Part shown: piece after piece, positions 4,401-62,161 of the stretch
Layout: each line of letters starts with the position of its first letter
How positions within the stretch are numbered: position 1 is the first letter of the stretch
NCBI RefSeq assembly: GCF_006345805.1
Contig: NC_042997.1
Coordinates: 150,350,001-150,414,000 of the forward strand
Length of the DNA stretch: 64,000 bases
Direction: 5' to 3'
DNA from: Octopus sinensis
Taxonomy: Eukaryota
Program-made: the position numbers and the translations under genes
The notes under the pieces: model-generated
The model's input: only the letters and a program-made list of their open reading frames with translations
What the model was told of the DNA's origin: nothing
The model's database searches: none

Positions 4401-4697
4401 CTTAGTATTTCCGATATTCTCGCGTATTGTCCATATCGCCAAGGGTAGGGGGTTTCTTTCATAGTGATCCCAGCATGTGAGGTCTCTGGGAGGCAGGAAA
4501 TCTTATCTTGATTTTAATTTTATCACAAATCAATACCCTTTCTCTTTATTAAATGATAATTCACTGCATCGTGTTCGTTTCTAACATTACATAATTTTGC
4601 ATGATTCAGTTCGAAAGTTGACAATAGCTGCACTGTTTTATAATTGGTTCTAATTCTTATTAGCATATCTGACTTAGAAGGCATCCGCTGCAGTAAT

Positions 4698-4875
4698 TTT
4701 GGGGAGGGGACTAGTCGATTACATCGACCACAGTGTTGCATTGGTACTTAATTTATTGACCCCGAAATGATGAAAGGCAAAGCCAACCTCGGCAGAATTT
4801 GAACTCAGAACGTAACGCAGACGAAATATCTCTAAGCATTTCGCCCAGCGTGGTAACGATTCTACCAGCTCGCCG
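4698..4875 (-). mobile_element. tRNA-derived SINE, family A
   Basis: Reverse complement of the GGCGAGCTGGCAGAATCGTTAGC...GAGTTCAAATTC (B box)...GTCGATGTAATCGACT element repeated elsewhere in the window. Confidence 0.85.
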
Positions 4876-9661: not shown

Positions 9662-10898
9662 CAGTGTACGGGGAATAAACTGTTGTGAGAATTACGGAAA
9701 AATGAAAATAATACTGACATCTCATTTTAACTGATATATTTACCAAAATTACATAAAATTATCTTGAACTTCTAAAGAGAAAATCGATTCAATAAGATCG
9801 CTATTGGCTTTAATCACAACCTCCAGATGACTTCGGAATATCATGCAACTCTTGTGGTTGGTCTCCATGTTTAAGTTGGTAAATGCTGCCGTAATCCTTG
9901 CCTTCAGTTCATCTTTAGTGTTACGCACAACTGAACCCCATCTGTAATAACCAAGGGGGTTGCAGTGTGGGGATTCAGGTGGTCAGATATTATGGATGGT
10001 GTGGTTGCAGAAATTGTCTGACAGCGATGACAGTTCTCCTGCTTGGCTGGCATGGCTTAGAGTACTCTTGTCAGATATACGGTTTTATAGCAGCCACCCT
10101 CTTGACTCAAGGTAGCACTACCTCCTCCAGGCACTTGCTGAAGGCCTCCGTGTTAAGTCTGAGGCTGTGTGGGAAGATGAATGGCGGTATAACGTCGCCA
10201 TCACTAGAGATCACTCCAAACACGAATTATTTTTATTACTCTCGGTACATGTTTTGTGGACATGGCAAGCCAATGATTGTTCTGTGTGTTTACCATTGAC
10301 CTTGGCAGGATTTTTCTCGTCTGATAAAAACCAAAACTTGTCCATTTGGAGGGGATACTTGAGTTTGTTCACAAGCTTCGTAGCGTTGTCTTTCCTCTTG
10401 TCTTTAATGGTTAGTGATAAAAATAGGCCATCTTTCTTCTAGTTTGAGGAATGTCTTCATGCACTACCTGCCTGATAAGAAGCTGAGGCACTCTCATGTC
10501 CTTAGTGATGGATCTGATTGGCTTCGATCGTTGTTAATCATGGTTTTGATCTTAGTAACAAACTAAGGAGTTTTTTCTTACCAGAACAATCACAGTGAAT
10601 TTTCCGAGCTGCCGTACCTTCGTAATCACCAATTGACTCGTCCAACTCATTCCGAATTCTCTGCTCTGTTCTGAGATTGACACCGAAACACTCAGAGAGT
10701 ATTGACGCTTCCGGCGCGAATTCCAAGCACCTGTCGCTTCCAAATTTTGGCAGAGTGAATTGCATCATGGTGTTGTTTTTCCCACAGAGGGTGCCTAACT
10801 GAGCCTACTATACTATACAGTCAAAAACATCAAAAACAAACATTGCGCATGCGCAAAATAAAAATATAGTATGGCCATAATTTTCCCATCGCACCCTG
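9662..10898 (-). mobile_element. Near full-length decayed mariner-type (maT/DD37D-like) DNA transposon
   Basis: The minus strand starts TA|CAGGGTGCGATGGGAAAA at 10900-10881, with a degenerate counterpart CAGTGTACGGGGAATAAA at 9662. Broken transposase from MMQFTLP (10768) through TKDELKARITAAFTNLN. Homologous to the copy at 61839-63402. Confidence 0.85.
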
Positions 10899-16676: not shown

Positions 16677-17864
16677 ATATATATACAAGCTCGCATAAAA
16701 AAAAACTAGCATGCAGTCACATTTACAAAATCCATATATATGGTGACACATAAAATTCTGTATATAGGTACATAGCCAAACACTGAAACACAATGGAGCC
16801 TCTTCCATTCTGGGTTCAAGGAACAAAACTGCGCTGGTAGTGGTCCAACAGATTTACGATCCGGTTATTGTAAACTGAGGTGGCGGTAGCTGGCATCGAT
16901 TACGTGTATAGAGAATCTGTTGAAATATGCACAAAAAGATAAAAAAAGTATTTCGTTTGCACTACATGTAGCTTTGATTCACCTCCAGAGAACCAACAAT
17001 ATCGTACTTGTTACTTTATCCTTGCTGTGAAACATATTTGTTTACTAATCTCTCAGTGCGACATGTTTTGCTTCGCGCAACCACACATATTTACAGTCTG
17101 GTGACAATTTAGAGAATTTTCCCGGAATACGAAACAAGACTCAGTAATGTCGTAGAGATTTTCATGTAAAAGAATATACTTTTGAACGGTGAATCATAAA
17201 GTAATTCACTCCTAATTACTCTCAAATGACCTCGTTGTAAGTACAAGTATCCATACACGACTTCTCGTCTATTTTTCAGTTCAGATTCCGTTAATTTCGA
17301 GTTTATTATTCCTTATTCCGACGCCGCTAATATAAATATCACGCTAATTAAAAGAGCAGTTTGCCAGTTGATAAAACAGCTGGAAATTCATATAAAGAAA
17401 CGTGAGTGAAAATCCATAACACAAAATCATACTAGCAAGCTTTGCGCAAACAGTATTTCTATACATATTTAGATGCTTATATACATTTTAAATATGCATA
17501 TACATACATTCGTTTATATATATGTGTGTGTATCTATGTATGTAATGTACATTCATATATACATAGATATGTGTGTATGACTACATACAGACTGGTACAA
17601 AAGGAGGTTAGCAGGTATATTTTTATTGTAAAAGTAGGCCTGGACCTGTGAAAAGGTGTGTGTCACAGTGAAGCCGATAGACTATAAGAATGTGTCAATG
17701 TTCAGGGCGGACATTTTGAGCATTTACGGGACTAATATTGTGCAATGCTTTTTAAATAATATCATAAAATATACAACTATACAACTGTAAGCCTACTTTT
17801 GCACCAGCCTGTATACTCATAAACTTATACATTATGCTCACACATACAAATATATATATATATA

Positions 17865-18260
17865 AATCCCTAGATGGTACTTTCAACGGTTTTTTCTCAG
17901 TGTTGTTGAGATGAATTTGGCTCTTTATAGCATTGAAGATAACCTTAAGGACCAAGTTGTGCCTCCATGTATACCTGTTCAATGCTAATGAACAGTTGGA
18001 AAGAATATGTTTTAGTGTACCGACCTTTCCACATTTGCAGATGTCATTCTCTGAGACGTTCCATCTTACTAGATTCATAGGTGATGGCAAAACATCATAA
18101 AATGAACGAATCAGGAAACTCAGCCGAGATGTCGTCCACTTCCACATCTCATCCCAACTTATCTTCCTCTCAACAACATGTTCTTCCCATCTCGTCATCT
18201 GACCATGATGAACACATACTTTCGGTTCGAACAGTTTTTTTTATAGGGCTCCGTTTTTAC
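17865..18260 (-). mobile_element. Hero-like (RLE-type) non-LTR retrotransposon C-terminal fragment
   Basis: GQMTRWEEHVVERKISWDEMW...FLIRSFYDVLPSPMNL..W...CKCGKVGTLKHILSNC...RYTWRHNLVL matches the zinc-knuckle region typical of Hero-clade elements. Confidence 0.75.
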
Positions 18261-18479: not shown

Positions 18480-19054
18480 GGCAATTAAGAAAATGGAGAA
18501 GAGATTCAATTAACAATCATCAGTAAGATTTATTTATTATAATCATAAGAATAAATAAATAAATAAATAAATACAACTCCACTCTTACATCTGTTTCCAC
18601 TTTGGGGTTCCAGAATGCTAAAATTGACATATCATACAAAAATTGAACTCCAAAGTTTCATCAGAGGGTCAGTAAGTCCATAATGGTAAGGATACGAGGT
18701 AATAAGTGAAAAAGTAAAATAGAAAAACCCAAAGCTGTATTCAGAAGTTGTGAGATCACATCTGATTACAATTTGATGGACGAGATTATCTCTTCCATCA
18801 AATTGCAACAAGATGTGATCTCACAACTTGTGAATATAGGCTTGGACCTTCCTTTTTCACTTTTTACCTTGTATCCTTACCATTATGGACTTACTGACGG
18901 TCTGATGAAACTTTGGACTTTAATCGTTATATCTGTCAGCTTTAGCATACTGGAAGCCCAAAGTAGGAAGTTGTATTTATTTATTCCTATGATTATAATA
19001 AATACATCTTACTGATGTTTGTCAATTGAATCTCTTCTCCATTTTCTTTCTTGC

Positions 19055-19055
<1 letters not shown>
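18480..19055. repeat. ~575-bp imperfect palindrome (foldback) centred at 18787
   Basis: 18480-18786 is the reverse complement of 18788-19055, from GGCAA/TTGCC at the ends to GAGAT-T-ATCTC at the centre. One 65-nt block shows 4 mismatches; the left arm carries several small insertions. Confidence 0.95.
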
Positions 19056-19094
<39 letters not shown>

Positions 19095-20348
19095 CATGGA
19101 TTCATGCACACATGTATACATACACCCATGAAACACACTCACGTATTCTTATATACAGGTATGCAAGTAAGACACTCAAGAGCTATCACGCTTTCTCAGC
19201 GTTTGACTGCAGCCGAATTCAAACGCGTTTTCTCCAACAAAATCTGCAACCGAACTACCTCAAAATCTACACGATGAATGAACTGCCAAATATGTTCGGT
19301 TATTCCGTCGATATATTGGCTTGGCATATACCACTTATTGTCGATTTTGGATTTTGACTTTCATGTCCGATATTTAGTTGGTTCTGTTCTGCTTTTGATT
19401 TATTAACTATTTTTTTTGTTTTTATACTGACTATGTATTTTTTTTCTTTCCTTTCTATCATTCGTGTAATGTATTGCAAATAGGCCAAGTAAAGTAGCAA
19501 GTATAATGTGAGAGCCATTCATTTTGCGATTCATAATCAATAGTGACTGCCAGTTAAAGATTCCAAGCATGTCATGAGCTTAACATTAAGTATACTTGTG
19601 TTCGAGTCTTCTGATCAACTCACATTCCTTTCCCGTCTTCAGCCATTTACTAGACATTTTTTTATGATTGTGATGTTGGTGTTGCTGGCTGTAAATGAGT
19701 TGATGGTTGATCATCATATATACTCAACAGCAACACTGCTACTCTTAATTCATTTCACCATTTTCCCCCTTTTCCCTTGCATTTCCTTCCTCTTGTCTTG
19801 TCCCCTTTCTCTACCACCACCACCACAAACATCTCCTCCTCCTTCTCTTCTTTTTCTTCTTCTTCTACTTCTTCCTGCGTCATTGTATCGTTTGTTTCCT
19901 CAATACTTCATAAATCTCATTTCACAGTCACCATAACTATGTGTATTATTGCAGTTACTGGGAACATTGAAGGACTTTTTTTTACATTATTACAACGACC
20001 TAAATTGTAGGCCTGTTCAGATATGCTTGTATTTCAATGTTCAACATTATTACAGTTGTGTTTATATGAAAACAAATCAACTTTATTTATGAATATGTGT
20101 ATCAGTGCATGTGCATTCGTATGTATAGTTGTATACAATTATGCATAAGTATGCATATATCCATATGCTCATATGTGTGTGTGTGTGTGTGTTAGTGCGT
20201 GTGTATGCATGAGCTCACACAACATATAAATACATGCACAGCTAAACATTTTATATGCGCCCGTATAAAATGAAATATGCATTCATATATATGTACAATG
20301 TGTGTGTGTGTGCGTGTGTGTGACACAGAAAGAGATAGATTGATAGAT

Positions 20349-20550: not shown

Positions 20551-20584
20551 TTTAACATGATCATTTTGTTTCTTTTCATTGCAG
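20551..20584 (+). promoter_or_regulatory. 3' splice acceptor opening the TLR exon (exon starts 20585)
   Basis: Branch-like TTTAAC (20551-20556), pyrimidine tract TCATTTTGTTTCTTTTCATT, then GCAG ending 20584. The in-frame TGA at 20558 lies just upstream, so the open frame begins essentially at this site. Confidence 0.7.
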
Positions 20585-20641: not shown

Positions 20642-23600
20642 ATGTCTTCCGTGAAATCCAGATCACAGCGGGCATGCGTAACGATGACGTCTAACTCCGT
20701 CTCGCAAATCTCCAGGTGTCATTCCTTGCGTCACTTGGCTGTAGTAGCAGCAGCAACTGCCACAAAGCATTTAGAACCGAAGCTAAATTCTCATTCAACA
20801 CTAAATTCTGCGAGAGAAGAAGCCATGACGCCGACAAAAGCCAAACTAACACCAATATCATTATCACAGTTTTCAACATTTTTATTCATACCGCCTCTAT
20901 TGCCATTCTCCTCTCCATTTAAACCTCCACCGCCAGCAACGCCGACTCAACCCTTACCCCTTTCTTCTTCTTCTTCTTCTTCTTCTTCTTCTTCTTCTTC
21001 TTCTTCTTCTTCTTCTTCTTCTTCTTCTTCTTCTTCTTCTTTTCTTCCTTCTCCTTCTCATTCGCACCCACCATCTCCTACACTTCACTGTACTTCTTCC
21101 TCTTGTTCTTTATCTTCTTCTTCGAATTCTGTAGTAGAAACGACTACGTTTTTCTCGTGTCCATGTTCTCTGCCTCACTATCTACCACCACCTCCTTCTT
21201 CACCCACCACTTCTCGTCTATCGTGCTCTGAGTCGTTACCGCCGTCCTTAATAAAACCACTACTTCCACAACCATCTCCTCCACCACAGTCGCCGATATC
21301 GGCATCTTCGACGTTAACATCATTATCATCATCGCCGGCGTCTGTTCCTTTTCACTGGATGAGTGTACTATTTCTTCTTCTTCTTTTCTCGCATTCAGCG
21401 CAACCGTGGGTGACTCAGCCCGAATTTCAGTGTCCTAAACAATGCGAATGCCATAACCTTCGTACTTCGCAGCTTTCCACTTCAATAGCAGCCCGCTGCC
21501 GAATAAATGAAACGATGAGTCGGTATAATTTCAGTGTATTTTCAGCCCCATATATTACTGTCCTGGTTATACAGTGCCAGGGCAAACCTTTAAAACCCGT
21601 TAACAAAATGCTCCGTAATCTTCCTTTTCTCGAAGAACTTGTATTTAAGGATTGTCATTTCAAAAGCATTCCTGAATATACACTGTTAGGCTTGAATAAC
21701 TTGAGAAATTTTAGCATTTTTGGTGCTGATCAGTTGACGTTAACTTCAAACATATTCCACAAAGCGGTTAAATTGAAAAACCTCGAGATAATACACAGTG
21801 GACTTAAAACAATTCCTGTTGATATGCTTTGCAATTCTGTAGATGTTGAATTGCTTACTTTATCGCAGAATGAATTAACGCACCTGTCAGAATTGAAAAA
21901 ACTTTGCCAGACTAACACCACCATTTTAGACCAAATAACACGCTTAGATTTGAGTTACAACTTACTCCAAACAATTCCAGCAGATTTCAGTAAATTATTT
22001 TCTGATATGCAAATGGTAAATTTTGTAGGTAACCAAATCGATAACATAGAAGCTGGTAGTGTCAGTGATCTTTATTATTTAACAGTTATGGATCTGTCAA
22101 AAAATCAAATCCAAAGTTTCCCACGTGACTTTTTAGAAAATTCCATTGGAATACAGCAGCTCGGTATCTCACAAAACCCTATCAAAACTATATTCCCATA
22201 TTTTAAAGATCTTCAAGATTTAGAAGTGTTTGAAGCCGAGCATACTTATTTAGACAATAGTTTCTTCCGGGAAATTCCTAAAGGGTCTGCATTAACGAAT
22301 TTAAACTTAGCACATTGCTATATGAGTAAAATAAATAAATCCCTGATGAGTAATTTGAAAAATTTAAGGCGTCTTGATCTTAAGAGTAATTCAATTTTAT
22401 CGCTGCCTTCTAATGTATTTTCTTCCAATGAGAAGCTCGAGGTTCTGATATTGTCAAACAATGATATTGAGGAACTTTTGGATAATTCCTTACAAGGACT
22501 TAGGGCCTTGCGAGAACTCGATATCAGTTACAATAATATATCAGTTATAAATGAAGACGCCTTTCACGATCTTCTGGTTATTGAAAAACTTGATTTAAGT
22601 TTCAACCAGCTGTATGATATCCCCAATGCTATAACCCCTTTGGACAAAATACAAGAATTGTATTTAGAGGGAAATTTCATCAGTAAAATTAACAAGAATT
22701 CATTCAAGGGTTTAGATTCTATTAATCGAATTGTTTTGTCTAAAAATAGAATTGTCTTTCTTGATGCCAGTAGTTTTACTCGATGCTTCAATTTACATAT
22801 TTTAGATTTATCTGAAAACAACATTTCCTTTATACATGAGGACGCGTTCGAAGGTCTACAATTGGTCGGTGTCAGTTTAGCAAGTAATAAAATTAAAAAC
22901 ATCGGTACAGCGTTATGGAAGCAGCACAATCTAAGCCAGGTTCATTTGCAGGGTAACCTTCTTGAAGCCATTATGTCGTCCAATTTCCCAGAAAACGTAA
23001 AGTTTTTAAACGTTTCGCATAATAGAATTTGGAATGTCCATCCATTTACCTTCTCAAACAAAGATACACTTGTAGAAGTTGACTTACGCCATAACAACAT
23101 CAGCTTCCTAGCAAATGATGCTATCAGTGTATCCCACAGAGTACGTTCCATTCCCGACGTTTACCTTATGGGAAATCCATTCAAATGTGATTGTAACATT
23201 GTCTGGCTTAAAAAACTTGCCAATGTAAGGCCAAGGAAAAAAGACGGCCTTCCGTACATTCCGGATTTGAACGAACTAGAATGTCATGCGGACAATGAAA
23301 GTTCAGTACCAACAGGCCGTATGTACGAGGTAAAGGAATCGGATTTTCTCTGCAAATACCTGAAAGAATGCTCTCCTGATTGCATCTGCTGCAATTTTGG
23401 CATGTGTGACTGCAACAGCATTTGCCCCGAACAATGCAGCTGCTATCGCTCTTATGATCGTAAAGCTAATATCATCAACTGTATGAACAGCGGACTTAGT
23501 GACTCACGTATGTTGCCTTCGAATGCCACCAAAATTTACCTGAGTGGTAATCGTCTTATATCTCTTTCCAAACACTCTTTTCTTCGCCAGCGAGATCTGT

Positions 23601-24925
23601 TAACTGTACTCTATTTAAATAGATCCCATATTTCCAATATACAAAATGGCACATTTATGACTTTAATAAATCTGAAACAGTTATACATGCACGATAATGA
23701 TTTGACTATTTTAACAAAAGAAACTTTCCAAGGATTAGAAAACCTTGAAGTCATCACGCTGAATTCAAATTCAATTAGTTATATTGCACCAGGAATGTTT
23801 GCTCCTATGCCGAAATTAAAAATTGTCGATGTCAGCAGTAATCGATTGCACATATTGGACAACAGTTTCTTGAGCCTAAAGTATTTAGAAAGTATTGCAA
23901 TCCACAACAATCCATGGATTTGCAAATGTCCATTCGTCATGGGACTGCAGGAGTTGTACATTAATAAACCTGATTTGGTGGTTCTCTCAGAATCTGTAAT
24001 ATGCGATCATGAAGATGTCATCAATAGCAGTATGTCTTTCTACACAGCTTACCCTCTTTTTGAGTTCGATGTACAGTTACACTGTCTGAACATCACTCCA
24101 GTCACCAATTTATCAGCCCACGTGAATACGCAAATCGACTCAAAAGTTATATGTGCTTTAGCCATTTTTTCAGCCGTCTTTTTGACTTTGATAATTGCTG
24201 TTATCAGCATCGCATGTTATCGTGAAGAGCTGAAGGTTTGGCTGTTCACGCAGTATGGATGGCGTATTGGAGATCCGTGGGCAAAGCTAGATGATTCTAA
24301 CCGACGATATGATGTCTTCGTAGCTTACACAAGCAAGAACGCAATGTTCGTGGAACACGAGCTTACACCGCGTCTAGAGAGAAGGGAACCACCTTACCAG
24401 GTATGTCTGACCTACAGGGATTATGATGTGGATATTTCCTACGCTCAAAACACAATCAATTGTATACAAAATAGCAAGCGAACCATTATGCTAGTGTCTA
24501 ACGACTTCTTCCAAACGGAATGGTTCCGTTATGATTTTCAAATTAACAATCATGATATACTGAAAACGCTTTCTGAAAGACTCATAGTCATTTTAATGGA
24601 AAAAGTCGATAGGAAAAAACTTGAATGCGACCTTATGTTTTATGCCAAGACGAAAAAATTCCTAAAATATCAAGACACACATTTCTGGGACAAACTTTAT
24701 TATATGCTACCAAAAGTTCGAGGACTGCCATTATTACCACAGACCCCAGAATCTGCGGTTTCCTCTGGAGAGCTACGCGATCAGTGTTGCAATAATATTG
24801 CTTTCTCGAAGACTTCGTTGGAAAGTGGGTACGAAGAGATTAACTTCGTACGGAAAAATGTTTTTCCCCGTTCAGATCATCAGACTGTATATTTAGCACC
24901 TGTTTGCCAAAGAAATTGTAAATAA
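20642..24925 (+). CDS. Toll-like receptor, multiple-cysteine-cluster (protostome/Toll-type; Tollo/Toll-6/Toll-7-like architecture); coding region in a single exon
   Basis: Uninterrupted ORF ending at TAA 24923-24925. Signal-like MSVLFLLLLFSHSAQP starts at 21359, then LRRNT CPKQCEC and ~21-23 LxxLxLxxN repeats. LRRCT NPFKCDC (23174) is followed by a second LRRNT (CSPDCICC...CPEQCSC), ~5-6 more LRRs and LRRCT NPWICKC (23909). TM VICALAIFSAVFLTLIIAVISIAC at 24146-24217; TIR from YDVFVAY (24308) to FWDKLYYMLP (~24712). First in-frame ATG is 20642 (1427 aa); alternative start 21359 gives 1188 aa. Confidence 0.97.
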   Translation: MSSVKSRSQRACVTMTSNSVSQISRCHSLRHLAVVAAATATKHLEPKLNSHSTLNSAREEAMTPTKAKLTPISLSQFSTFLFIPPLLPFSSPFKPPPPATPTQPLPLSSSSSSSSSSSSSSSSSSSSSSSSSSFLPSPSHSHPPSPTLHCTSSSCSLSSSSNSVVETTTFFSCPCSLPHYLPPPPSSPTTSRLSCSESLPPSLIKPLLPQPSPPPQSPISASSTLTSLSSSPASVPFHWMSVLFLLLLFSHSAQPWVTQPEFQCPKQCECHNLRTSQLSTSIAARCRINETMSRYNFSVFSAPYITVLVIQCQGKPLKPVNKMLRNLPFLEELVFKDCHFKSIPEYTLLGLNNLRNFSIFGADQLTLTSNIFHKAVKLKNLEIIHSGLKTIPVDMLCNSVDVELLTLSQNELTHLSELKKLCQTNTTILDQITRLDLSYNLLQTIPADFSKLFSDMQMVNFVGNQIDNIEAGSVSDLYYLTVMDLSKNQIQSFPRDFLENSIGIQQLGISQNPIKTIFPYFKDLQDLEVFEAEHTYLDNSFFREIPKGSALTNLNLAHCYMSKINKSLMSNLKNLRRLDLKSNSILSLPSNVFSSNEKLEVLILSNNDIEELLDNSLQGLRALRELDISYNNISVINEDAFHDLLVIEKLDLSFNQLYDIPNAITPLDKIQELYLEGNFISKINKNSFKGLDSINRIVLSKNRIVFLDASSFTRCFNLHILDLSENNISFIHEDAFEGLQLVGVSLASNKIKNIGTALWKQHNLSQVHLQGNLLEAIMSSNFPENVKFLNVSHNRIWNVHPFTFSNKDTLVEVDLRHNNISFLANDAISVSHRVRSIPDVYLMGNPFKCDCNIVWLKKLANVRPRKKDGLPYIPDLNELECHADNESSVPTGRMYEVKESDFLCKYLKECSPDCICCNFGMCDCNSICPEQCSCYRSYDRKANIINCMNSGLSDSRMLPSNATKIYLSGNRLISLSKHSFLRQRDLLTVLYLNRSHISNIQNGTFMTLINLKQLYMHDNDLTILTKETFQGLENLEVITLNSNSISYIAPGMFAPMPKLKIVDVSSNRLHILDNSFLSLKYLESIAIHNNPWICKCPFVMGLQELYINKPDLVVLSESVICDHEDVINSSMSFYTAYPLFEFDVQLHCLNITPVTNLSAHVNTQIDSKVICALAIFSAVFLTLIIAVISIACYREELKVWLFTQYGWRIGDPWAKLDDSNRRYDVFVAYTSKNAMFVEHELTPRLERREPPYQVCLTYRDYDVDISYAQNTINCIQNSKRTIMLVSNDFFQTEWFRYDFQINNHDILKTLSERLIVILMEKVDRKKLECDLMFYAKTKKFLKYQDTHFWDKLYYMLPKVRGLPLLPQTPESAVSSGELRDQCCNNIAFSKTSLESGYEEINFVRKNVFPRSDHQTVYLAPVCQRNCK
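20963..21040 (+). repeat. Pure (TCT)26 microsatellite, in frame as poly-Ser in the TLR leader
   Basis: 78 nt of uninterrupted TCT codons. Confidence 0.95.
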
Positions 24926-27847: not shown

Positions 27848-28025
27848 TTAGGGGAGGGGACTAGTCAATTACATCGACCTCAATATATGACCGGTACTTA
27901 TTTCATAGATGAAAAGACGAAAGGCAAGTCGACCTCATCGGCGTTCGAACTCACAACGTAAGACGGTCAAAATGTTAGCATTATTTTGCCAAGCATGTTA
28001 TCCATTTCCCCAGCTTATTGCCTTA
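27848..28025 (-). mobile_element. tRNA-derived SINE, family A (diverged)
   Basis: GGGGAGGGGACTAGTCAATTACATCGAC...GGCAAGTCGACC...TTCGAACTCACAACG, homologous to 4698-4875. Confidence 0.7.
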
Positions 28026-33491: not shown

Positions 33492-34315
33492 GTCTGTCTG
33501 TCGGTCGGTCCGTTTATCTTTCTGTCTACCTCGTTAGTCTGTCCACCAGTATGTATGAATATATGTATGCGCGTGTGCATGTGAGAGAGAGGCAGTATTT
33601 GTTTCCTTGCACGCTTGTATGTGTGAGTATATTTTGTTGGGATTTGTAAAACTCAAGCCGGTCACCAGGAAAATGGCAAATATCTTTTCATTCAAAACAT
33701 ATCTTGGTCGCTGTAGCTCTCTGAATTTTTTTTTTACATACGCATATGTGCATACGTGTTGATTATATGTACACGCGTACGGGTGTGCAAGCGTGTGCGT
33801 GTCACGATGTAATACAAGTTTCTATATTTCATTTATGTTTGTGTGTACAAGCACGTATATTCCATACATATGTTCACCCGGAAAATACAAATACAGAAGC
33901 CCTGAATAGTTTTCCAATGTTTTACTGTTCTTCAATTCTATTGTACGTAAAGAAAATAAAGCAGTCTTCTCTCACTTTATATTTTTGTTCAATATTACTA
34001 GAATTCTCTCCCTTGTATATGTAGCTAGGCGTTAGTGTATTTTGTTACAATTCACCAGTTACGGTATTTTGTTAGACCTGATGTCCAAATCACAATTTCT
34101 TCAAGTCTCCATTTCCATATCCCAAATTCTGATACTAGCACTGGTACGACGAAAGCATTGTGAGATACAGTTTTATTGAATCAGAATTCCATATGTTCCG
34201 AATTTTGTTGAGGTATACTTTTGTCTATCTAGCTTTACTCAGGGTAACAGCATGTGTAATATTCTTGTCGTTTGTGAGTTATTTGTAACGGTAATTACAG
34301 GTGATGAGGTGGTAT

Positions 34316-34692
34316 GGCAGCGAGCTGGCAGAGACGTTAGCACGCCGGGCGAAATGCTTAGCGGTATTTCATCTGTCTTTTTATTCTGAGTTCAGATTTC
34401 GCCGAGGTCAACTTTGCCTTTCATTCTTTCGGGGTCAATTAAATAAATACCAGTTACGCGCTAGGGTCGATATAATAGACTTAATCCGTTTGTCTGTCCT
34501 TGTTTGTCCTCTCTGTGTTTAGCCCCTTGTGGGTAGTAAAGAAATAGCTATTTCATCTGTCTTTATGTTCTGAGTTCAAATTCCGCAGTGGTCGACTTTG
34601 CCTTTCGTCGTTTCCGGGTCGATAAATTAAGTATCAGTTGCATACTGTGGTCGATCTAATCGACTGGCCTTGTGCTTAGAGTAGAAAAGAAT
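34316..34692 (+). mobile_element. tRNA-derived SINE, family A, dimeric form
   Basis: GGCAGCGAGCTGGCAG head and B-box-like GAGTTCAGATTTC, then a second headless body with GAGTTCAAATTCC and a tail ending AGAGTAGAAAAGAAT. Confidence 0.85.
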
Positions 34693-36756: not shown

Positions 36757-36969
36757 AAGGCAGCGAGCTAGCAGAATCGTTAGCACGCCGGGCGAAATGC
36801 CTAGCGGTATTTCGTCTGTCGTTACGTTCTGAGTTCAAATTCAGCCGTGGTCGACTTTGCCTTTCATCCCTCCGGGGTCGATAAATAAAGTACCATTTAT
36901 CCCTTAATCCCTTTGTCTGTCCTTGTTTGTCCCCTCTATCTTTAGCCCCTTGTGGGAAATAAAGAAATA
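36757..36969 (+). mobile_element. tRNA-derived SINE, family A
   Basis: AAGGCAGCGAGCTAGCAGAATCGTTAGC...GAGTTCAAATTC...CCCTTGTGGGAAATAAAGAAATA. Confidence 0.9.
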
Positions 36970-39429: not shown

Positions 39430-39825
39430 GTAAATCTCGAAGAATTTCATCTTAATTGTCATTCATGAAATTCATTGTATTATATGAAGAAAGTGCGACG
39501 GTAGCTCGACCGCTTTGGAACACCTGTACATGCAACCCAGAAAGAACTTTCTGATTCACGACATCATCTGTGCTGTATACTCACTCCACCTTGTATCTCT
39601 CTGCATTTCGTATATGACCGCGTGTGTATCGTTGGCGATTTTTCCCCCGTCTTCCCTTCCATGGATCTTTCCTTTTCCTATGTTTCTGACGAAGAGCTCC
39701 GCTCCAAACGTTAAAACCTCCTTCTTTCTTTCCTTTCCTGAGCGTCCAATAACACTATACTTGTTCCACGTCTTCGCGTTGTTATGTTTTCTCTTTGTGT
39801 TTTCATGTTTGGATCAACTATATAT
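39430..39825 (+). mobile_element. Penelope-like element: GIY-YIG endonuclease remnant plus pLTR with hammerhead motif
   Basis: CGACGGTAGCTCGACCGCTTTGGAACACCTG resembles frameshifted RRLADRFAEHL of PLE GIY-YIG domains. It is followed by the same ~200-nt terminus as 16471-16676, then (TA)n. Confidence 0.65.
39682..39717 (+). ncRNA. Minimal type I hammerhead motif (G12->C, probably inactive)
   Basis: GTTT-CTGACGA-A-GAGC(TCC)GCTC-CAAA-CGTT-AAAAC. Confidence 0.55.
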
Positions 39826-39856
39826 ATATATATATATATAATATATATATACATAT

Positions 39857-40083
39857 ACTCTTTACTCTTTTACTCTTTTACTTGTTTCAGTCATTTGACT
39901 GCGGCCATGCTGGAGCACCGCCTTTAGTCGAGCAAATCGACCCCGGGATTTATTCTTTGTAAGCCCAGTACTTATTCTATCGGTCTCTTTTGCTGAACCG
40001 CTAAGTGACGGGGACGTAAACACACCAGCATCGGTTGTGAAGCAATGCTAGGGGGACAAACACAGACACACAAACACACACAA

Positions 40084-40128
<45 letters not shown>

Positions 40129-40195
40129 CGACAGGCTTCTTTCAGTTTCCGTCTACCAAATCCACTCACAAGGCATTGCTCAGCCCGGGGCTATA
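39857..40195 (-). mobile_element. tRNA-derived SINE, family B (5'-truncated), with internal microsatellite
   Basis: Matches 48059-48507 over the 3' two-thirds; repeated ACTCTTTT tail. Confidence 0.9.
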
Positions 40196-40812
40196 TTTCT
40201 ATCCTATGGTCATTGGAACATGACTTGAAAGGGAGTGAAATATAGTCCTCCGTTATTCCAAGATTTTTTATATATTCTTTTTTTCGCACTAACGTTCTGA
40301 TGGACATATTAGATGTATACATCATTTGCATTGCTCTAGAGTCAATCTCATAATTACATTTCGTTTCTACTTTGAAGTCTGCATTGTCATTTTTCATTAG
40401 TTATATGTGTTATGTGTGCATGTGTATGTATGTATGTATGTATGTATGTATGTATGTATGTATGTATGTATGTATGTATGTATGTATGTATTTATCTATG
40501 TATGTAGATATGTATGTATGTGAGTGAGTGTACTGAGTGACACGACAGAAAGATGTGATCATGTCTATAGCTACTGTGAACAAATGTGATTCATCAGGAA
40601 ATACACAATGATAGCTGTGAACAGGCGTTCTTTGAAGTCGGTTCAAGGGAGGTTAGAACACGTGGGTGAGCCCAACAGTTTTGCTATGAATTCCACATCG
40701 GAAAATGGCTGAAAGAAAGATAATTATTGACATTTATTTTCGCTTTATTGTAAGGGAAAAGAGAATGACCGATCTTCTGCTAATATTCTTTTCTGCGCTA
40801 GGCACAGCGCCC

Positions 40813-40969
40813 GAAATTTGGGGTAGGTGCCAGTCGATTAGATCGACCAAGTATGCAACTGGTACTTAATTTATCAACCCCGAAAGGATGAAAGGCGAAG
40901 TCGAACTCGACAGAATTTGAACTAAAAATTTCGCCCAGCGTACTAACGTTCCTGCCAGCTGGCCGCTTT
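40813..40969 (-). mobile_element. tRNA-derived SINE, family A
   Basis: Reverse complement of the family A head and body. Confidence 0.8.
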
Positions 40970-41079
40970 GATCTTTTGTTAATATTGATGCACTTATCAT
41001 AATATTTGATGAAATGTTAAAGGTGGCTTTCAGTAAGCGTTCAGCGTTTGTCTATGTTTGTCTTTTGCTGTCTTTTATA

Positions 41080-41476
41080 TTTTACTACTTTCAGTTATTG
41101 GACTGCGGCCAAGCTGGGGCATGCTGGGTCACCACCCTAATGGGCCATTTAATCGAATAAATCGACGCCAGGACAATTTTTTAAAGCTTAGTGCTTCTTC
41201 AATTGTTCCTTTTCGCCGAACCGTTAAGCTACGGGGCCGTAACCACACCAACACCGGTTGTGAAGTGGTGGTGGGGGACCAACACAGACACACACATAGA
41301 AATACACAAACACATATATTTACGACGGGCTTCTTTCAGTTCCCATCAACTAAATCCACTGACGAGACTTTGGTCAGCCTGAGGCTATAGAAGAACACTT
41401 GCTCAAGGTACTTCCCAGTGGGACTGGATTCAAAATTATGTGATTGGGACGCAAGCTTCTTACCACAGAGCCACGC
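41080..41476 (-). mobile_element. tRNA-derived SINE, family B (diverged)
   Basis: Collinear with 48059-48507, including the head region. Confidence 0.85.
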
Positions 41477-42826: not shown

Positions 42827-43296
42827 TGCGTGTGTGTGTGTGTGTGTGTTGGTGCGCGCGCATCATTGCGCGTGTGCATGTATGCATTGGATTACTGATA
42901 TCCATTGTCTGGTACAGTTCTTGCAGCTTCTTTAATATATTTCTGTGTTTAGTTCATTAGCAATCATATGTGTTGTCTCTTCGACTGGTTATATTCTTGG
43001 GACAGGCGCGATTATTGTTCAAGATTTTTGTGTACCTTGGTGTCGTATAACCATCAGGCCTCTTTCTTTGTGATAAAGCAGTATCGTGCTGATGAAGATT
43101 GCTTTTGCTTATACTGAAATCGTTTAACTTCAGTTGAATTTGATACGCTCTTGGTGGTTTCTCCTATATAATCTGTGGTGTCTTCTATATATCTTTCAAA
43201 TGGATCATGATATATTCAGGTTTATAATTTGTTTCATTTTGTCTGTAATACAACGGTTATTCACTCATGTTTTCTTCTTGAAATGCTATCCACTTT

Positions 43297-43687
43297 AAGG
43301 CGGCGAGCAGCCAGAATCGTTAACACGACGGGCGAAATGCTTAGCAGTATTTTGTCTGCAGCTACGTTCTGAGTTCAAATTCTGCCGCGGTCGACTTTGC
43401 CTTTCATCCTTTCGGTGTCGATTAAATAAGTACCAGTTACGCACTGGGGTCGATGTAATCGACTGAATCCGTTCGTCTGTCCTTGTTTGTCCTCTCTGTG
43501 TTTAGTCAATTGTGGGTAGTAAAGAAATAGGTCTTATGTTTTGAGTTCAAATTCCGCCGAGGTCGACTTTGCCTTTCATCCTTCCAGGTTACTTTAAATT
43601 TAGTACCAGTTGCGAACTGGGGTCGATCTAGTCGACTGAAACCCTCCCCCAAAAATACGGGTCTTTTGCCTAGAGTAGAAAAGAATC
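43297..43687 (+). mobile_element. tRNA-derived SINE, family A, dimeric form
   Basis: Same head + body + headless second body + AGAGTAGAAAAGAAT layout as 34316-34692. Confidence 0.9.
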
Positions 43688-48058: not shown

Positions 48059-48264
48059 TACTCTTTTACTTGTTTCAGTCATTTGACTGCAGCCATACTG
48101 GAGCACCGCCTTTAATCGAGCAACTCGACCCCAGGACTTATTCTTTGTAAGCCCAGTACTTATTCTATCGGTCTCTTTGCCGAACCGCTAGGTAACGGGG
48201 ACATAAACACATCAGCATCGGCTGTCAAGCGATGTTGGGGGGGCAAACACAGACATACAAACTT

Positions 48265-48341
<77 letters not shown>

Positions 48342-48507
48342 TATGACGGGCTTCTTTCAGTTTCCGTCTACCAAATCCACTCACAAGGCTTTGGTCGGCC
48401 CGAGGCTATAGTAGAAGACACTTGTCCAAGGTGTCACGCAGTGGGACTGAACCCGGAACCATGAGGCTGGTAAACAAGCTACCAACCACACAGCCACTCT
48501 TGCGCCT
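48059..48507 (-). mobile_element. tRNA-derived SINE, family B, full length
   Basis: Minus strand begins AGGCGCAAGAGTGGCTGTGTGG (A box)...GGTTCAGTCCC (B box)...CCTTGGACAAGTG, with an internal (TA)/(TG) array. Confidence 0.92.
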
Positions 48508-48564
48508 ATATATAAATATCCTCTATTTACCTAATATCGATGTCTCATTCTGTTGTTGTCACAC

Positions 48565-48600
<36 letters not shown>

Positions 48601-48663
48601 GTATATATAAACATATAGGTATATATATATGTGTACATACATACATATATACATATATATACC

Positions 48664-48857
48664 CTTTTACTCTTTTACTTGTTTCAGTCAGTTGACTGCG
48701 GCCATTCTGGAGCACCGCCTTTAGTCGAGCAACTCGACCCCGGAACTTATTCTTTGTAAGCCCAGTACTTATTCTATCGGTCTCTTTTGCCGAACCGCTA
48801 AGTGACGGGGACGTAAACACACCAGCATCAGTTGTCAAGCAATGCTAGGGGGACAAT

Positions 48858-48889
<32 letters not shown>

Positions 48890-49050
48890 CATATATACGA
48901 CAGGCTTCTTTCAGTTTCCGTCTACGAAATCCACTCACAAGGCATTGGTCGGCCCGGGGCTATAGCAGAAGACACTTGCCCAAGATGCCACGCAGTGGGA
49001 CTGAATCCGGAACCATGTGGTTGGTTAGCAAGCTACTTACCACACAGCCA
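48664..49050 (-). mobile_element. tRNA-derived SINE, family B
   Basis: Near-consensus copy; its head abuts the LINE fragment at 49051. Confidence 0.92.
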
Positions 49051-49525
49051 GTACATTTGGAAAGAGGTATCATTACTCATATCGATACCCCGGCCCTTCC
49101 CTAATTTAGGTTCTGGCTTTGGAAACCCCTGTGAATCAGTGTACCCTTTAAGCTTAAAATTCAGTTTTGGATGCTGGTAATGCACGATTTGGAATATTTC
49201 AGCAGGGACTCTGTATTTTCTGCGAGTCTTTCGTATCGTTTGCATAGATACCAAGGGTGGGTGTCCGGGCAGATGATGGCATATCTGAAAGGGACACTAT
49301 GAAAAGCAGTGGTCCCAAGACTGTGACCTGTGGAAAATTACCCATTATTTTTGGTTTTCTTTCAGAAAATCATGTAACCACTCTCCAAGTTTTCCAGCTA
49401 TGCCGAGATCACACAGTTTGTGATATACCATGCCATGATACACTTTATCAAAAGCTTTTGCAAAGTCAGCGTATATTACTTCCACATTTGCTGGGTATCA
49501 CTCACTAAGTTGTTTTCCCCAAGGA
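49051..49525 (-). mobile_element. CR1-group LINE RT fragment, inverted
   Basis: NVEVIYADFAKAFDKVYHG, LGPLLFIVSLSD and YANDTK motifs on the minus strand. Confidence 0.85.
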
Positions 49526-49526
49526 A

Positions 49527-49570
<44 letters not shown>

Positions 49571-49600
49571 TATATTATATTATATTATATATGTACATAC

Positions 49601-50184
49601 AACCTAAATTAGGGAAGGGCCGGGGTATCGATATGAGTAATGATACCTCTTTCCAAATGTACATTACCAGGATGTCCACAAAGTGCAGACTGGCTGGCTG
49701 GATACTGAGAACATTCAGAACCAGAGAGAAGGAAACAATGATGGTCTTCTGGAGGACTTTCGTACTCAGCCGCATTGACTACTGCTCCAGCTATAGTCAC
49801 CCAACAGTATAAAATTAACAGTGGATCTTGAAGCAATCCAGCGAAGCTTCGTAAAGAAGATCATCTCGTTGCAACAGCTCAGCTACTGGGAAAGGCTGAA
49901 ACAGCTAAGATTATACTCCCTGGAGAAAAGGTGAGAGGGGTATGCAGTAATATACACCTAGGAGATCCTGGAACGGAATTGTGCCATATTTTGGCATTGA
50001 AAGCTACACCAATGCCAGAAAGCGTCGACACTGCACAGTGCCAAAGATCCCAGCAATGTCATCGTGCTTCAGGACCAATTACTGCAACAGCCTGGGATTC
50101 AGGGAACGACAGCTTTTAAAATATTCTCCCAAAGAGCCTGAGGGTCCTACATAAAGTGTATGTAGGTGTTTTCAAATCAAACCT
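49601..50184 (+). mobile_element. CR1-group LINE, RT thumb/C-terminal fragment
   Basis: GIDMSND...LAGWILRTFRTREKETMM.FWRTFVLSRIDYCS; QLSYWERLKQLRLYSLE; VFKSNL. Confidence 0.85.
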
Positions 50185-55800: not shown

Positions 55801-56840
55801 TATAACTATATACATAGAATCTGTAAGTGGAGCAGTAAATATATGCAAGATATTTCTTAAATTTAAAATGTGACATAGGTTTCGTCATCAATCTACATTC
55901 TGTGAATGTGGCTTTCTGTCTTTGTAAGAAACCAAATCTTTCCTCAGAGAAAGAATTTAGATAATTAAAAACAGGAAAGATCATCCATCCATCCAGCCAG
56001 CCAGCCATCCAGCCATCCAGCCAGCCATACATACATACATACATACATACATACATACATACATACATACATACATACATACATACATACATACATACCT
56101 TGCATATTCTGTTACTGATACATTATCATTTAGCCGAAAGTTAGCGAATAAAAAATAGTTACCTCTCCCTCAAGTGACACTAACTAATTATTCAAAAATG
56201 ACGTATTTGATAATTTAGTTCCGGTTACACCATGCTCGAGGTGGTCATGAATGTTATATAGTTATCCGATCAGGACTGATCTTGTGGGGAAAATAGTAAG
56301 AACTATAATTAAACGAACTTATGACCAAAGGCTTCTACTGAGTGTTGATTATAGCTGCAAATTTGAGTGCATGCTTTTTAATTTTTGATTTTTATTTGTT
56401 TCTGTCATTAGAACGACCAGAGCAATATTGTCTCCATTCTAATGAATAAAAGACTCTAGTCTAATGACCGAAGGGCTTAGGCGATGAAATCGGTCCCGGT
56501 AATTATTTTTAACACTGGCACTTCTATCTACGCTTATTACCAAACAGATAAATTGCGAGAATGTAAGGACAGCGACCCTGATTGCCAAGTGGTCAGAGAC
56601 AGTTGCTAATATCCACTCGTAAATACATATATTTACACGTATTGATGATACGATTCTAAAATGCTAACATCAACCAAATTTACCTACAGGTCATTATTGG
56701 CCTAGGGCTATTGTAAAATACCAATCCGCAGTGAAATGTGAGACGGAATACAAATCCAAGTATTTGTAAAGCGAATTTCTTAATAAAACAGCGAACGAGT
56801 TATATTGCCACCCAATATAGTAAATCCTAACATGCCGAAA

Positions 56841-56896
<56 letters not shown>

Positions 56897-57008
56897 CCAC
56901 CATCATCACCATCATCATCACCATCACCATCACCATCACCATCACCATCACCATCACCACCACCACCACTACCACCACCACCACCATCACCATCACCATC
57001 ACCATCAC

Positions 57009-57092
<84 letters not shown>

Positions 57093-57186
57093 CATTACTA
57101 TTTTCATTATCATTACTATTATCATTATTATTATTATCATTATCATTATTATTATTACTACTATAATTATTATTGTTGTTGTTATT
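56841..57186. repeat. Compound trinucleotide array (CAT)n-(CAC/CAT)n-(CAT)n-(TAT)n
   Basis: Read directly from the sequence; source of the spurious poly-His/poly-Tyr ORFs. Confidence 0.95.
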
Positions 57187-58095
57187 GCCTTTACACAGCT
57201 TCTAACGGTGGGGATGTATTACAATGTCAGCTGTTCACTACCAGTGAACTAAGGTAACATTTCCTATTTTTCGATCACCTTCCAGAGTATTCCAGCGGTT
57301 CCAAGCATTGCTGTTTTCTGCAAGTGCTCCACCCTGATTGCAGCCCCTATTTGTTCAACGTACGTCTCGATATTTTTGTTCACTGTTCCAAGGGCTCCGA
57401 CAATTATTGGTACTACTGCTACCTTTTTCATCTAACCCAACTGCTTAAATTCCCAAGCTAGCCCGTGATGTCTCTCGACTTTTCTTTCTTCCTTATCGCA
57501 TGCCCTTTTGTCAGCTGGGCATGCCATATCTATGATCCAGCATAGTTTGTTTTCTTTCTCAACTAAGACCATGTCCGGCTTCCTCTTCTCTATTTCATGG
57601 TCGCACTGAATCATAAAATCTCATAGGATCTTTGCATTTCCATTTTCGACGATGCCTTCAGGTTTGTGTTCGTACCAATTTTTTACTCTGTCAAGTCCAT
57701 ACTTGCTGCAGAGTGTCCAATGTACAAGCCTGGATATATTGTCCTGGTGTCACTTATATTCTTTCTGGGCTAGTGGTGTACATTAGCTAGTAATATGCTA
57801 TACGGTTTCACTGTTTTGTCCACAGATTCTGCACTTAACACTTTCTGATGTGTTTTTCTATTCTGTATTTCATATAGTTTGTTCTTAGTGCTTGCTCGAT
57901 TTTAGTCATCCACAGCCATCTTTTTTCTCTGTCTGTCTTATCTTCAACATCCCTATGAAATTGACCATGCATTCATTTTTTTACCCACCTATTTTCAGTT
58001 TTATTTGTTTTCAATTTCTTGTACAGTGCTTTATCTTTGCAATTTTTCATCCTACACAAGCCTGACCTTCTTATTTCTAATAATAACGGTTCTGT
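57187..58095 (-). mobile_element. 5'-truncated R4/Dong-clade non-LTR retrotransposon (zinc knuckle + restriction-like endonuclease)
   Basis: MHGQFHRD; CRICGQNSETV*HITS*C (CCHC); RKPDMVLVEKENKLCWIIDMACP (PD-D RLE); PIIVGALG...LQKTAMLGTA. Stop TAG at 57266-57264, then a short UTR and an AAT-rich tail. Confidence 0.9.
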
Positions 58096-61838: not shown

Positions 61839-62127
61839 GTGATGGGTAAATTGTCGCCATTTAATATCTCTAAATTTGCGCATGCGCATTCTTCGATTCT
61901 TTTACTTCATACAATTATTTGACTGCAGCCATGCTAGAGCACCGTCTTTAGTAAAAAAGTTGACCCCCGGGACTTATTCTTTGTAAGCCTTATTGCATCG
62001 GGTCTTTTGCCGAACCGCTAAACACACCAACATCGATTGTCAAGCTATGGTAGGACAAACACAGACACACACTCAGATACATCCACACACAAACACTCAT
62101 ACACACGCATACGCGCATATATATATG

Positions 62128-62161
<34 letters not shown>

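What the first reader, a model, noticed from the sequence alone, without database searches (positions are those of the whole stretch)
18480..19055. ~575-bp near-perfect foldback 1.5 kb upstream of the TLR acceptor: candidate long dsRNA hairpin
Seen: the two arms (307 and 268 nt) pair essentially from end to centre with a 1-nt loop at 18787, with scattered substitutions and small indels. No TSD, coding capacity or match to other repeats in the window is evident. Divergence between the arms argues against a simple foldback-read artefact. Established: coleoid cephalopods edit RNA extensively via ADAR on dsRNA, and long hairpin RNAs can yield endo-siRNAs. Inference: if within the TLR primary transcript, it could be an editing hub, splicing modulator or small-RNA source; otherwise it is a foldback/MITE-like element or cruciform-forming DNA.
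Basis: partly seen in the sequence, partly recalled or inferred. Interest (0 to 1): 0.7.

Follow-up and report, generated by a model that had tools for sequence, protein, structure and literature searches.

The report
Lone non-coding DNA palindrome upstream of TLR
A real 576-base near-palindrome lies 1.5 kb upstream of an octopus Toll-like receptor exon, but it looks like ordinary decaying repeat DNA, a kind octopus genomes hold in abundance, and not a dedicated RNA gene.

Summary
Window 18480-19055 is a spacerless inverted repeat with arms of 307 and 268 nt and a 1-nt centre at 18787. The arms show 238 matches, 30 mismatches and 39 gap columns. The RNA fold is -318.8 kcal/mol (z = -33). It ends sharply, has no TSD, no coding signal, no Rfam match and no second copy in the window.

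The window is Octopus sinensis chromosome CM016859.1 (GCA_006345805.1). The neighbouring gene is a Tollo-like TLR whose coding exon follows a splice acceptor (AG at 20584) conserved in Argonauta hians.

The foldback is absent from 10 kb upstream of the A. hians gene. This is expected, because the arms differ by K = 0.12 and TLR synonymous divergence is 0.5-0.67, so it arose after the split. The arm mismatches show no bias towards keeping RNA pairing.

I read it as neutral palindromic DNA. I lean slightly to a decayed foldback/MITE-like transposon copy. A local inverted duplication is nearly as likely. If Pol II reads through it, it would be a routine ADAR hyper-editing substrate. An endo-siRNA role is unlikely, because molluscs show no such pathway.

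I could not test genome-wide copy number, transcription or the loci of closer Octopus species. Interest is low.

The parts
18480..18786 (.). Left arm of the palindrome (307 nt). It is A-rich on the + strand and contains an (ATAA)n run at about 18550-18575.
   Evidence: pairs with the right arm end to centre and carries all 39 extra (gap) bases.
18787..18787 (.). Centre of symmetry: a single T between GAGAT and ATCTC. The folded loop is 3 nt.
   Evidence: (pair I3, 1 nt between the arms).
18788..19055 (.). Right arm of the palindrome (268 nt).
   Evidence: The terminal 32 nt, GGCAAnnAAGAAAATGGAGAAGAGATTCAATT, occur only at the two ends of the element in the whole window.
19056..19095 (.). (CA)n(TA)n compound microsatellite abutting the right end. 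This is context and may hide any former target-site duplication.
17752..18198 (-). Context: a short LINE-like ORF fragment with a weak zf-RVT match. It does not extend to or across the foldback.
19252..19611 (+). Context: a conserved non-coding block between the foldback and the TLR exon. It is about 70-75% identical to A. hians L001 4136-4401. It may be a promoter, 5' exon or enhancer.
20565..20584 (+). Context: polypyrimidine tract plus CAG, a 3' splice acceptor conserved in A. hians (AG ends at L001 9944). Nucleotide homology between the species starts here.
20642..24925 (+). Context: single-exon CDS of a Tollo-like Toll-like receptor (LRR_8 1.6e-71, TIR 4.5e-09).

Best explanation
This is a genuine, lineage-specific, selectively neutral DNA palindrome with no coding capacity and no dedicated function. 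My preferred origin, by a small margin, is a decayed copy of a palindromic non-autonomous DNA transposon (foldback/MITE-like, arms making up the whole element). It would have inserted into TA-rich intergenic or intronic DNA upstream of the TLR coding exon after the Octopus and Argonauta lineages split. Its arms have since drifted apart by about 11% plus a few indels.

Shown: the structure, its sharp ends, its uniqueness in the available DNA, its absence from A. hians, and neutral-looking arm divergence.

Inferred: as DNA it does nothing in particular. If Pol II reads through it, either as part of a TLR 5' intron or from any other transcript, the RNA would fold into a roughly 270-bp imperfect duplex. 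ADAR would then hyper-edit and unwind it, as happens to the very many similar loci in octopus. It would not feed an endo-siRNA pathway.
For: The structure is real and far beyond chance. It is a discrete unit with sharp symmetric termini GGCAA...TTGCC, and the palindrome does not extend into the flanks beyond shuffle expectation. It is 576 bp, 32% GC, has no Pfam signal and only short stop-ridden ORFs, which fits a non-autonomous element. It sits among other repeats: a LINE fragment 280 bp away, microsatellites on both sides, and many interspersed families in the window.

Divergence looks neutral. There are 13 transitions and 17 transversions. G:U-compatible changes number 4 on the + strand and 9 on the - strand (p = 0.27). 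The longest perfect run is 28 bp, against 28 expected for random placement of the interruptions.

Arm K = 0.12 against TLR dS of 0.49-0.67 with A. hians dates the event after the split. This agrees with its absence from L001. There is no Rfam family above gathering score.

From the literature: octopus has an exceptionally high density of loci that form long near-perfect dsRNA, palindromic repeats can be ADAR substrates on their own (PMC5625713), and molluscs show no endo-siRNA pathway (PMC12479628).
Against: No target-site duplication is present at the ends. No second copy was found in 64 kb of O. sinensis or 24 kb of A. hians. No ORF call resembling any of the six frames exists in the public protein collections. 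All of these fit a one-off local inverted duplication equally well or better.

Genome-wide copy number, the defining test for a transposon family, could not be run. The zero in 64 kb only excludes families above roughly 10^5 copies.

Non-function is argued from lack of evidence. Transcription, editing and conservation within the genus Octopus were not testable here.
Confidence: 0.45

Rival explanations
1. Local inverted duplication. About 270-300 bp of pre-existing unique DNA was copied in reverse orientation right next to itself. Possible routes are replication template switching or hairpin-primed (snap-back) repair synthesis at a short inverted repeat (GAGAT-T-ATCTC at the centre). The palindrome then decayed neutrally. 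The functional consequences are the same as in the best explanation.
For: It is single-copy in everything that could be searched. There is no TSD. The centre is spacerless, with a 5-bp inverted repeat around 1 nt, as expected for fold-back priming; hairpin-mediated foldback inversions are documented in yeast (PMC7467729, seen, abstract only). All gap events make the same arm shorter, which would fit an imperfect copy, though with about 4 independent events this is not significant.
Against: Small internal inverted duplications need two template switches. To my knowledge they are much rarer than palindromic repeat insertions in animal genomes. Any palindrome has an inverted repeat at its centre, so that feature does not discriminate. 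A perfect 2 x 300-bp spacerless palindrome at birth would be expected to be unstable.
Confidence: 0.35
2. Functional cis-acting RNA hairpin of the TLR gene. The foldback lies in the 5' intron of the TLR pre-mRNA and acts as an ADAR-recruiting editing hub, a splicing modulator or a nuclear-retention signal that tunes TLR expression.
For: A conserved splice acceptor at 20584 implies an upstream non-coding exon, so the foldback could be intronic. The + strand RNA would be 83% paired with helices up to 28 bp. There are 9 A:C mismatches on the + strand, a context ADAR favours (my own knowledge). Octopus edits such structures heavily.
Against: The only conserved non-coding block (19252-19611) lies downstream of the foldback. 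If it marks the promoter or first exon, the foldback is outside the transcript. There is no counterpart in A. hians. There is no sign of selection for pairing on the sense strand. It matches no known RNA family. Such structures are abundant in octopus, so the prior for any one being functional is low.
Confidence: 0.08
3. Independent hairpin-RNA gene (hpRNA or miRNA-like) that yields Dicer-dependent small RNAs.
For: Its architecture resembles Drosophila hpRNA loci: a long inverted repeat with a short loop. The central hairpin gives weak hits to miRNA covariance models.
Against: The Rfam hits score 36 bits or less against gathering scores of 75-100, and they occur on both strands. That pattern reflects generic hairpin shape, not family membership. 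No complementarity to any target in the window, including the TLR, was found. The mollusc small-RNA survey found no evidence for a dedicated endo-siRNA pathway, O. bimaculoides included.
Confidence: 0.03
4. Assembly artefact from a chimeric fold-back long read, such as a missed SMRTbell adapter.
For: Palindromic artefacts are known in long-read assemblies (my own knowledge). No independent assembly of this locus could be retrieved.
Against: The arms differ by 30 substitutions (11%) and several multi-base indels, which is not the error profile of a polished consensus. The palindrome is only 576 bp and internal, with unique and different flanks on both sides. The right-hand flank runs on in the same order as in A. 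hians: conserved block, acceptor, then TLR. There are no Ns in the window.
Confidence: 0.03

Closest known systems
Palindromic MITEs: non-autonomous DNA transposons whose two halves are inverted copies, e.g. the palindromic Harbinger-derived repeat of Xenopus discussed in PMC5625713
   Same: A few hundred bp, non-coding and AT-rich, with the whole element forming a hairpin. It can form dsRNA on its own when transcribed and so become an ADAR substrate.
   Different: Here there is no TSD, no other family member in the DNA available, and no link to an autonomous element. Family membership is therefore unproven.
Drosophila Foldback (FB) elements
   Same: Long inverted arms that make up most or all of the element, with no coding capacity in most copies.
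   Different: FB arms are built of tandem subrepeats and are flanked by 9-bp TSDs (my own knowledge). The arms here are unique sequence apart from a short (ATAA)n run, and no TSD is seen.
Foldback inversions / inverted duplications from hairpin-primed or template-switch synthesis (e.g. PMC7467729 in yeast)
   Same: Spacerless inverted duplication centred on a short inverted repeat. No TSD. Single locus.
   Different: The documented cases are mostly large chromosomal rearrangements. This one is a small internal 2 x ~290-bp event fixed in a wild genome. Its ancestral one-arm state has not been seen.
Drosophila hpRNA loci (endo-siRNA hairpins)
   Same: A long inverted repeat with a very short loop that is predicted to form a long RNA duplex.
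   Different: hpRNAs are transcribed, give 21-nt siRNAs and have complementary target genes. None of that is shown here, no target lies in the window, and molluscs appear to lack the pathway.
Inverted interspersed-repeat pairs that form ADAR-edited dsRNA (Alu-pair type). An example lies next door in A. hians at L001 1506-2216.
   Same: Same predicted RNA consequence: a long imperfect duplex in non-coding sequence near or in a gene.
   Different: Those arms are copies of a high-copy ~150-nt repeat with other copies nearby. The arms here have no other copies and abut without a spacer.

Membership tests
MITE / palindromic non-autonomous DNA transposon | Terminal inverted repeats | tested here: met
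   The arms pair from the very ends (GGCAA...TTGCC). The outer 82 nt are 93% complementary.
MITE / palindromic non-autonomous DNA transposon | Target-site duplication flanking the element | tested here: not met
   No direct repeat of 2 bp or more abuts either boundary within +/-8 nt. The only match is TATATA on the left against a TA microsatellite 19-33 nt beyond the right end. A microsatellite at the right boundary could have erased a TSD.
MITE / palindromic non-autonomous DNA transposon | Multiple dispersed copies in the genome | not testable with these tools
   There are zero extra copies in the 64-kb window and in 24 kb of A. hians, and none in the searchable collections (57/59). No octopus whole-genome search was available.
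MITE / palindromic non-autonomous DNA transposon | Small size and no coding capacity | tested here: met
   576 bp. The longest ORF is 80 aa, with no Pfam hit and no homologues.
Drosophila-type Foldback (FB) element | Arms composed of tandem subrepeats | tested here: not met
   TRF reports no array inside 18480-19055. Only a short (ATAA)n run is present.
In-situ inverted duplication (template switch / fold-back priming) | Inverted copy directly abutting its template, no TSD, single locus | tested here: met
   1-nt centre, no TSD, and no other copy in the available DNA.
In-situ inverted duplication (template switch / fold-back priming) | An outgroup shows the ancestral one-arm state at the orthologous site | not testable with these tools
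   The only outgroup reachable, A. hians L001, is too diverged (dS 0.5-0.67). O. vulgaris and O. bimaculoides loci could not be fetched.
hpRNA / endo-siRNA hairpin gene | Long inverted repeat that folds into an extended duplex | tested here: met
   -318.8 kcal/mol, z = -33.
hpRNA / endo-siRNA hairpin gene | Complementarity to a target gene | tested here: inconclusive
   There is no similarity to the TLR or any other part of the window. The rest of the genome was not searchable.
hpRNA / endo-siRNA hairpin gene | Transcription and Dicer-sized phased small RNAs | not testable with these tools
   No expression data were available. The literature reports no dedicated endo-siRNA pathway in molluscs (PMC12479628).
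Known RNA families (Rfam 15, incl. miRNA precursors) | Score at or above the family's gathering threshold | tested here: not met
   The best hit overlapping the foldback is mir-944, at 36 bits against a gathering score of 100, and it scores on both strands.
ADAR hyper-editing substrate | Long, nearly perfect intramolecular dsRNA | tested here: met
   83-86% of bases are paired. Perfect helices reach 28, 25 and 19 bp.
ADAR hyper-editing substrate | Transcribed, with clustered A-to-G mismatches in RNA-seq | not testable with these tools
   No RNA-seq data were available, and the position of the TLR transcription start relative to the foldback is unknown.

The most novel reading that the evidence does not exclude
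The foldback is kept within the genus Octopus as an intronic or upstream hairpin of a Toll-like receptor gene. When transcribed, its dsRNA is hyper-edited by ADAR and thereby tunes TLR pre-mRNA processing or marks the transcript as 'self'. That would link the cephalopod editing machinery to the regulation of an innate-immune receptor.
Probability: 0.04. Interest if true: 0.6.

Novelty: new member of a known kind. Interest (0 to 1): 0.15.

Why it matters
It matters little as it stands. Octopus genomes are unusually rich in loci that can form long dsRNA, and this is one more, sitting next to an immune receptor gene. It would become interesting only if it proved to be transcribed with the TLR, conserved among Octopus species with compensatory arm changes, and needed for normal TLR expression. 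As a single-copy palindrome without a TSD it could also serve as a small, datable example of how spacerless palindromes arise and survive in an animal genome. That would first require closer outgroups to settle its origin.

Tried and rejected
(1) Orthologous conservation. I fetched the A. hians TLR locus with 10-kb flanks. Only the TLR exon and one upstream block align. dS of 0.5-0.67 shows neutral DNA is saturated, so absence there says nothing about function.

(2) Closer Octopus orthologues. None were returned by the protein search. The window's own TLR is not in the protein collection. The exact look-up returns only the source assembly.

(3) Finding family members through ORF calls. I tried the 80-aa ORF with the word search and with index-free phmmer. 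The single phmmer hit, P0121, is a tandem-repeat junk ORF that matches a low-complexity stretch. A six-frame concatenated query also found nothing.

(4) Exact look-ups of six ORFs in or beside the foldback, to find independent assemblies. None are on record.

(5) Exact-core DNA scans of the metagenome, prokaryote-genome and viral collections. The only result was two chance 21-mer hits in bacterial MAGs, with similarity limited to 22-28 nt and 0.6-1.6 hits expected by chance.

(6) Insertion into the neighbouring LINE fragment. Rejected, because no RT-like frame continues to or across the foldback. The first Pfam attempt on raw frames failed on stop codons.

(7) Extension of the palindrome into the flanks. 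It is not above shuffle expectation.

(8) Selection for RNA pairing. There is no wobble excess, and the longest perfect run equals the random expectation.

(9) Using L002's 5' end as a transcript to locate the TLR first exon.

(10) Literature search for the Octopus TLR gene structure and for mollusc foldback elements. Nothing specific was found. No divergence time usable for an absolute date was found.

Full report
THE OBSERVATION. The repeat finder reports three nested inverted pairs that together run from the outer ends to a 1-nt centre at 18787. A global alignment of the left arm (307 nt) with the reverse complement of the right arm (268 nt) gives 238 matches, 30 mismatches and 39 gap columns. 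That is 88.8% identity over aligned bases. As RNA the + strand folds end to centre at -318.8 kcal/mol, against -110.8 +/- 6.3 for shuffles (z = -33). The - strand is slightly more stable, at -327.6 kcal/mol. With DNA parameters the fold is -197.4 kcal/mol (z = -31). The palindrome stops sharply. The flanks are not complementary beyond shuffle expectation, and no direct repeat abuts the ends. The arms have no other copy in the 64-kb window, although many other interspersed families do. 'Near-perfect' somewhat overstates a duplex with about 11% mismatches and 39 bulged bases.

WHERE IT IS. An exact look-up of the neighbouring gene's product places the window on Octopus sinensis assembly GCA_006345805.1, chromosome CM016859.1, with window base 1 at 150,340,001. 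The gene is a Tollo-like Toll-like receptor with LRR_8 at 1.6e-71 and TIR at 4.5e-09. Its closest retrievable relative is Argonauta hians 'toll-like receptor Tollo', at 91% amino-acid identity. Its whole CDS (20642-24925) is one exon. That exon is preceded by a polypyrimidine tract and a CAG whose AG ends at 20584. This site is conserved in A. hians, and nucleotide homology between the two species begins there.

Between the foldback and the acceptor lies one block, 19252-19611, that is still 70-75% identical to A. hians (L001 4136-4401). Synonymous sites between the two species are near saturation, so this block is probably a promoter, 5' exon or enhancer. It lies downstream of the foldback. 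If it marks the start of transcription, the foldback is not in the TLR pre-mRNA. If transcription starts further upstream, the foldback is intronic. Sequence alone cannot decide. To the left, 280 bp away, is a short LINE-like ORF fragment that does not continue into or across the foldback. A (CA)n(TA)n microsatellite abuts the right end.

CODING CAPACITY AND KNOWN RNA FAMILIES. The longest internal ORFs are 80 and 59 aa. They are mirror images of one another and have no Pfam match. They also have no homologue by word-indexed search or by index-free phmmer over 1.84 billion representatives. The one phmmer hit, P0121, is a tandem-repeat junk ORF matching a low-complexity stretch. A query made of all six frames found nothing either. 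Rfam gives only sub-threshold miRNA-model hits: 36 bits or less against gathering scores of 75-100, on both strands. That is what any hairpin produces.

AGE AND CONSERVATION. The foldback sequence is absent from the 10 kb upstream of the A. hians TLR. That absence is expected. TLR synonymous divergence between the two species is 0.49 at fourfold sites and 0.67 by Nei-Gojobori. The two arms differ by K = 0.12. If the arms were identical at birth and drifted neutrally, the structure arose after roughly three quarters or more of the time since the Octopus-Argonauta split had passed.

The pattern of arm differences looks neutral. There are 13 transitions and 17 transversions. Only 4 of the 30 mismatches are G:U-compatible on the TLR-sense strand, against 9 on the other strand (p = 0.27). 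The longest perfect helix is 28 bp, exactly what random placement of the 37 interruptions gives. Nothing indicates selection to keep pairing. Closer outgroups (O. vulgaris, O. bimaculoides) would be decisive, but I could not reach them.

ARTEFACT? This is unlikely. The arms differ by 30 substitutions and several multi-base indels. The palindrome is short and internal, with unique and different flanks. The right flank continues in the same order as in A. hians. There are no gaps in the window. I could not retrieve an independent assembly of the locus, so a small residual doubt remains.

WHAT IT MOST LIKELY IS. Two origins fit, and I cannot separate them with the tools at hand.

(a) A decayed palindromic non-autonomous DNA transposon (foldback/MITE-like). 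In favour are the discrete unit with sharp symmetric termini, the size, the AT-richness, the lack of coding capacity and the repeat-rich setting. To my knowledge, most few-hundred-bp near-palindromes in animal genomes are of this kind. Against are the lack of a TSD (a microsatellite sits exactly where the right-hand one would be) and the lack of any other copy in the little octopod DNA available. Zero copies in 64 kb only excludes families above about 10^5 copies.

(b) A one-off local inverted duplication by template switching or fold-back priming at the short central inverted repeat GAGAT-T-ATCTC. This fits the single-copy status, the lack of a TSD and the spacerless centre. However, it is a rarer class of event.

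I put these at about 0.45 and 0.35. Either way the element is a passive by-product.

HOW IT WOULD BEHAVE. This part is inference. As DNA it is inert, because the diverged arms make it a poor cruciform and a stable locus. If transcribed it would form a duplex of about 270 bp. Porath et al. found that octopus has the highest fraction of genomic loci able to form long near-perfect dsRNA (4.4e-3 of random 50-mers). They also found that hyper-editing is concentrated in such repeat-derived structures, including repeats that are palindromic on their own (PMC5625713). The default expectation is therefore routine ADAR hyper-editing, not a special 'hub'. [quoted passage not shown] The A. hians locus carries its own, unrelated hairpin-forming structure 2 kb upstream of its conserved block. 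That structure is an inverted pair of a ~150-nt multi-copy repeat. This illustrates how common such structures are near this gene without being conserved.

COMPARISON WITH KNOWN KINDS. In its predicted behaviour it resembles palindromic MITEs and inverted repeat pairs, which are ADAR substrates when transcribed. Membership of a transposon family is unproven: TIRs, small size and lack of coding capacity are met, the TSD is not met, and copy number is untestable. It is not a Drosophila-type FB element, because the arms contain no tandem subrepeats. It is not a member of any Rfam family. It has the architecture of a Drosophila hpRNA locus, but none of the defining expression, small-RNA or target features could be shown, and the pathway seems to be missing in the clade.

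VERDICT. This is a real structure of a common, known kind, and its exact origin is unresolved. Interest is low (0.15). The most novel reading still open is a conserved, edited hairpin that regulates an innate-immune receptor. I put its probability at about 4%.

Noticed in passing
window 49051-49662: A second hairpin-capable element with perfectly identical 62-71-nt terminal inverted repeats around about 490 nt of unrelated sequence. Its ends can be read as TA|CATTTGGAAAG...CTTTCCAAATG|TA, which suggests a young Tc1/mariner-like non-autonomous element with a TA target duplication.
   Followed up: partly
window 19252-19611 (= L001 4136-4401): A conserved non-coding block upstream of the TLR exon, 70-75% identical between O. 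sinensis and A. hians although synonymous sites are near saturation. It lies about 1 kb from the acceptor in Octopus and 5.5 kb in Argonauta. It is a candidate promoter, first exon or enhancer.
   Followed up: partly
window 20642-21397: The annotated TLR CDS begins with about 250 Ser/Pro-rich codons (including a long TTC/Ser run at 20962-21058) ahead of the signal-peptide-like MSVLFLLLLF. This part has dN/dS of about 0.67 against 0.07 for the rest. The ORF called on the more distant relative's contig (L002) begins at residues that read like a signal peptide, with no long extension before them. The modelled start codon may therefore be too far upstream, or the extension is a fast-evolving region.
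   Followed up: partly
window 9787-10849 and 62340-63401: Two 1.1-kb segments in inverted orientation, 51 kb apart and 69% identical. The second overlaps a 174-aa ORF (62860-63384) that has no Pfam hit. They may be old copies of one mobile element; I did not classify them.
   Followed up: no
L001 1506-2216 (A. hians): A roughly 700-bp hairpin-forming structure built from inverted copies of a ~150-nt interspersed repeat, which has further copies at L001 ~15.1, 17.1-18.3 and 19.6 kb. It is unrelated in sequence to the Octopus foldback.
   Followed up: yes
window 4693-4875, 27863-27961, 34313-34668, 36757-36969, 40785-40928, 43296-43686; also 39821-40195, 41072-41473, 48059-49050, 61898-62345: At least two interspersed repeat families (about 100-450 bp, 70-87% identical, both orientations) are scattered across the window. 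This shows how repeat-dense the region is, whereas the foldback arms match none of them.
   Followed up: no
window 56694-57257: ORFs of 150 aa on both strands made almost entirely of His/Tyr or Met/Val/Ile runs. They are translations of a long trinucleotide-type simple repeat, not genes.
   Followed up: no
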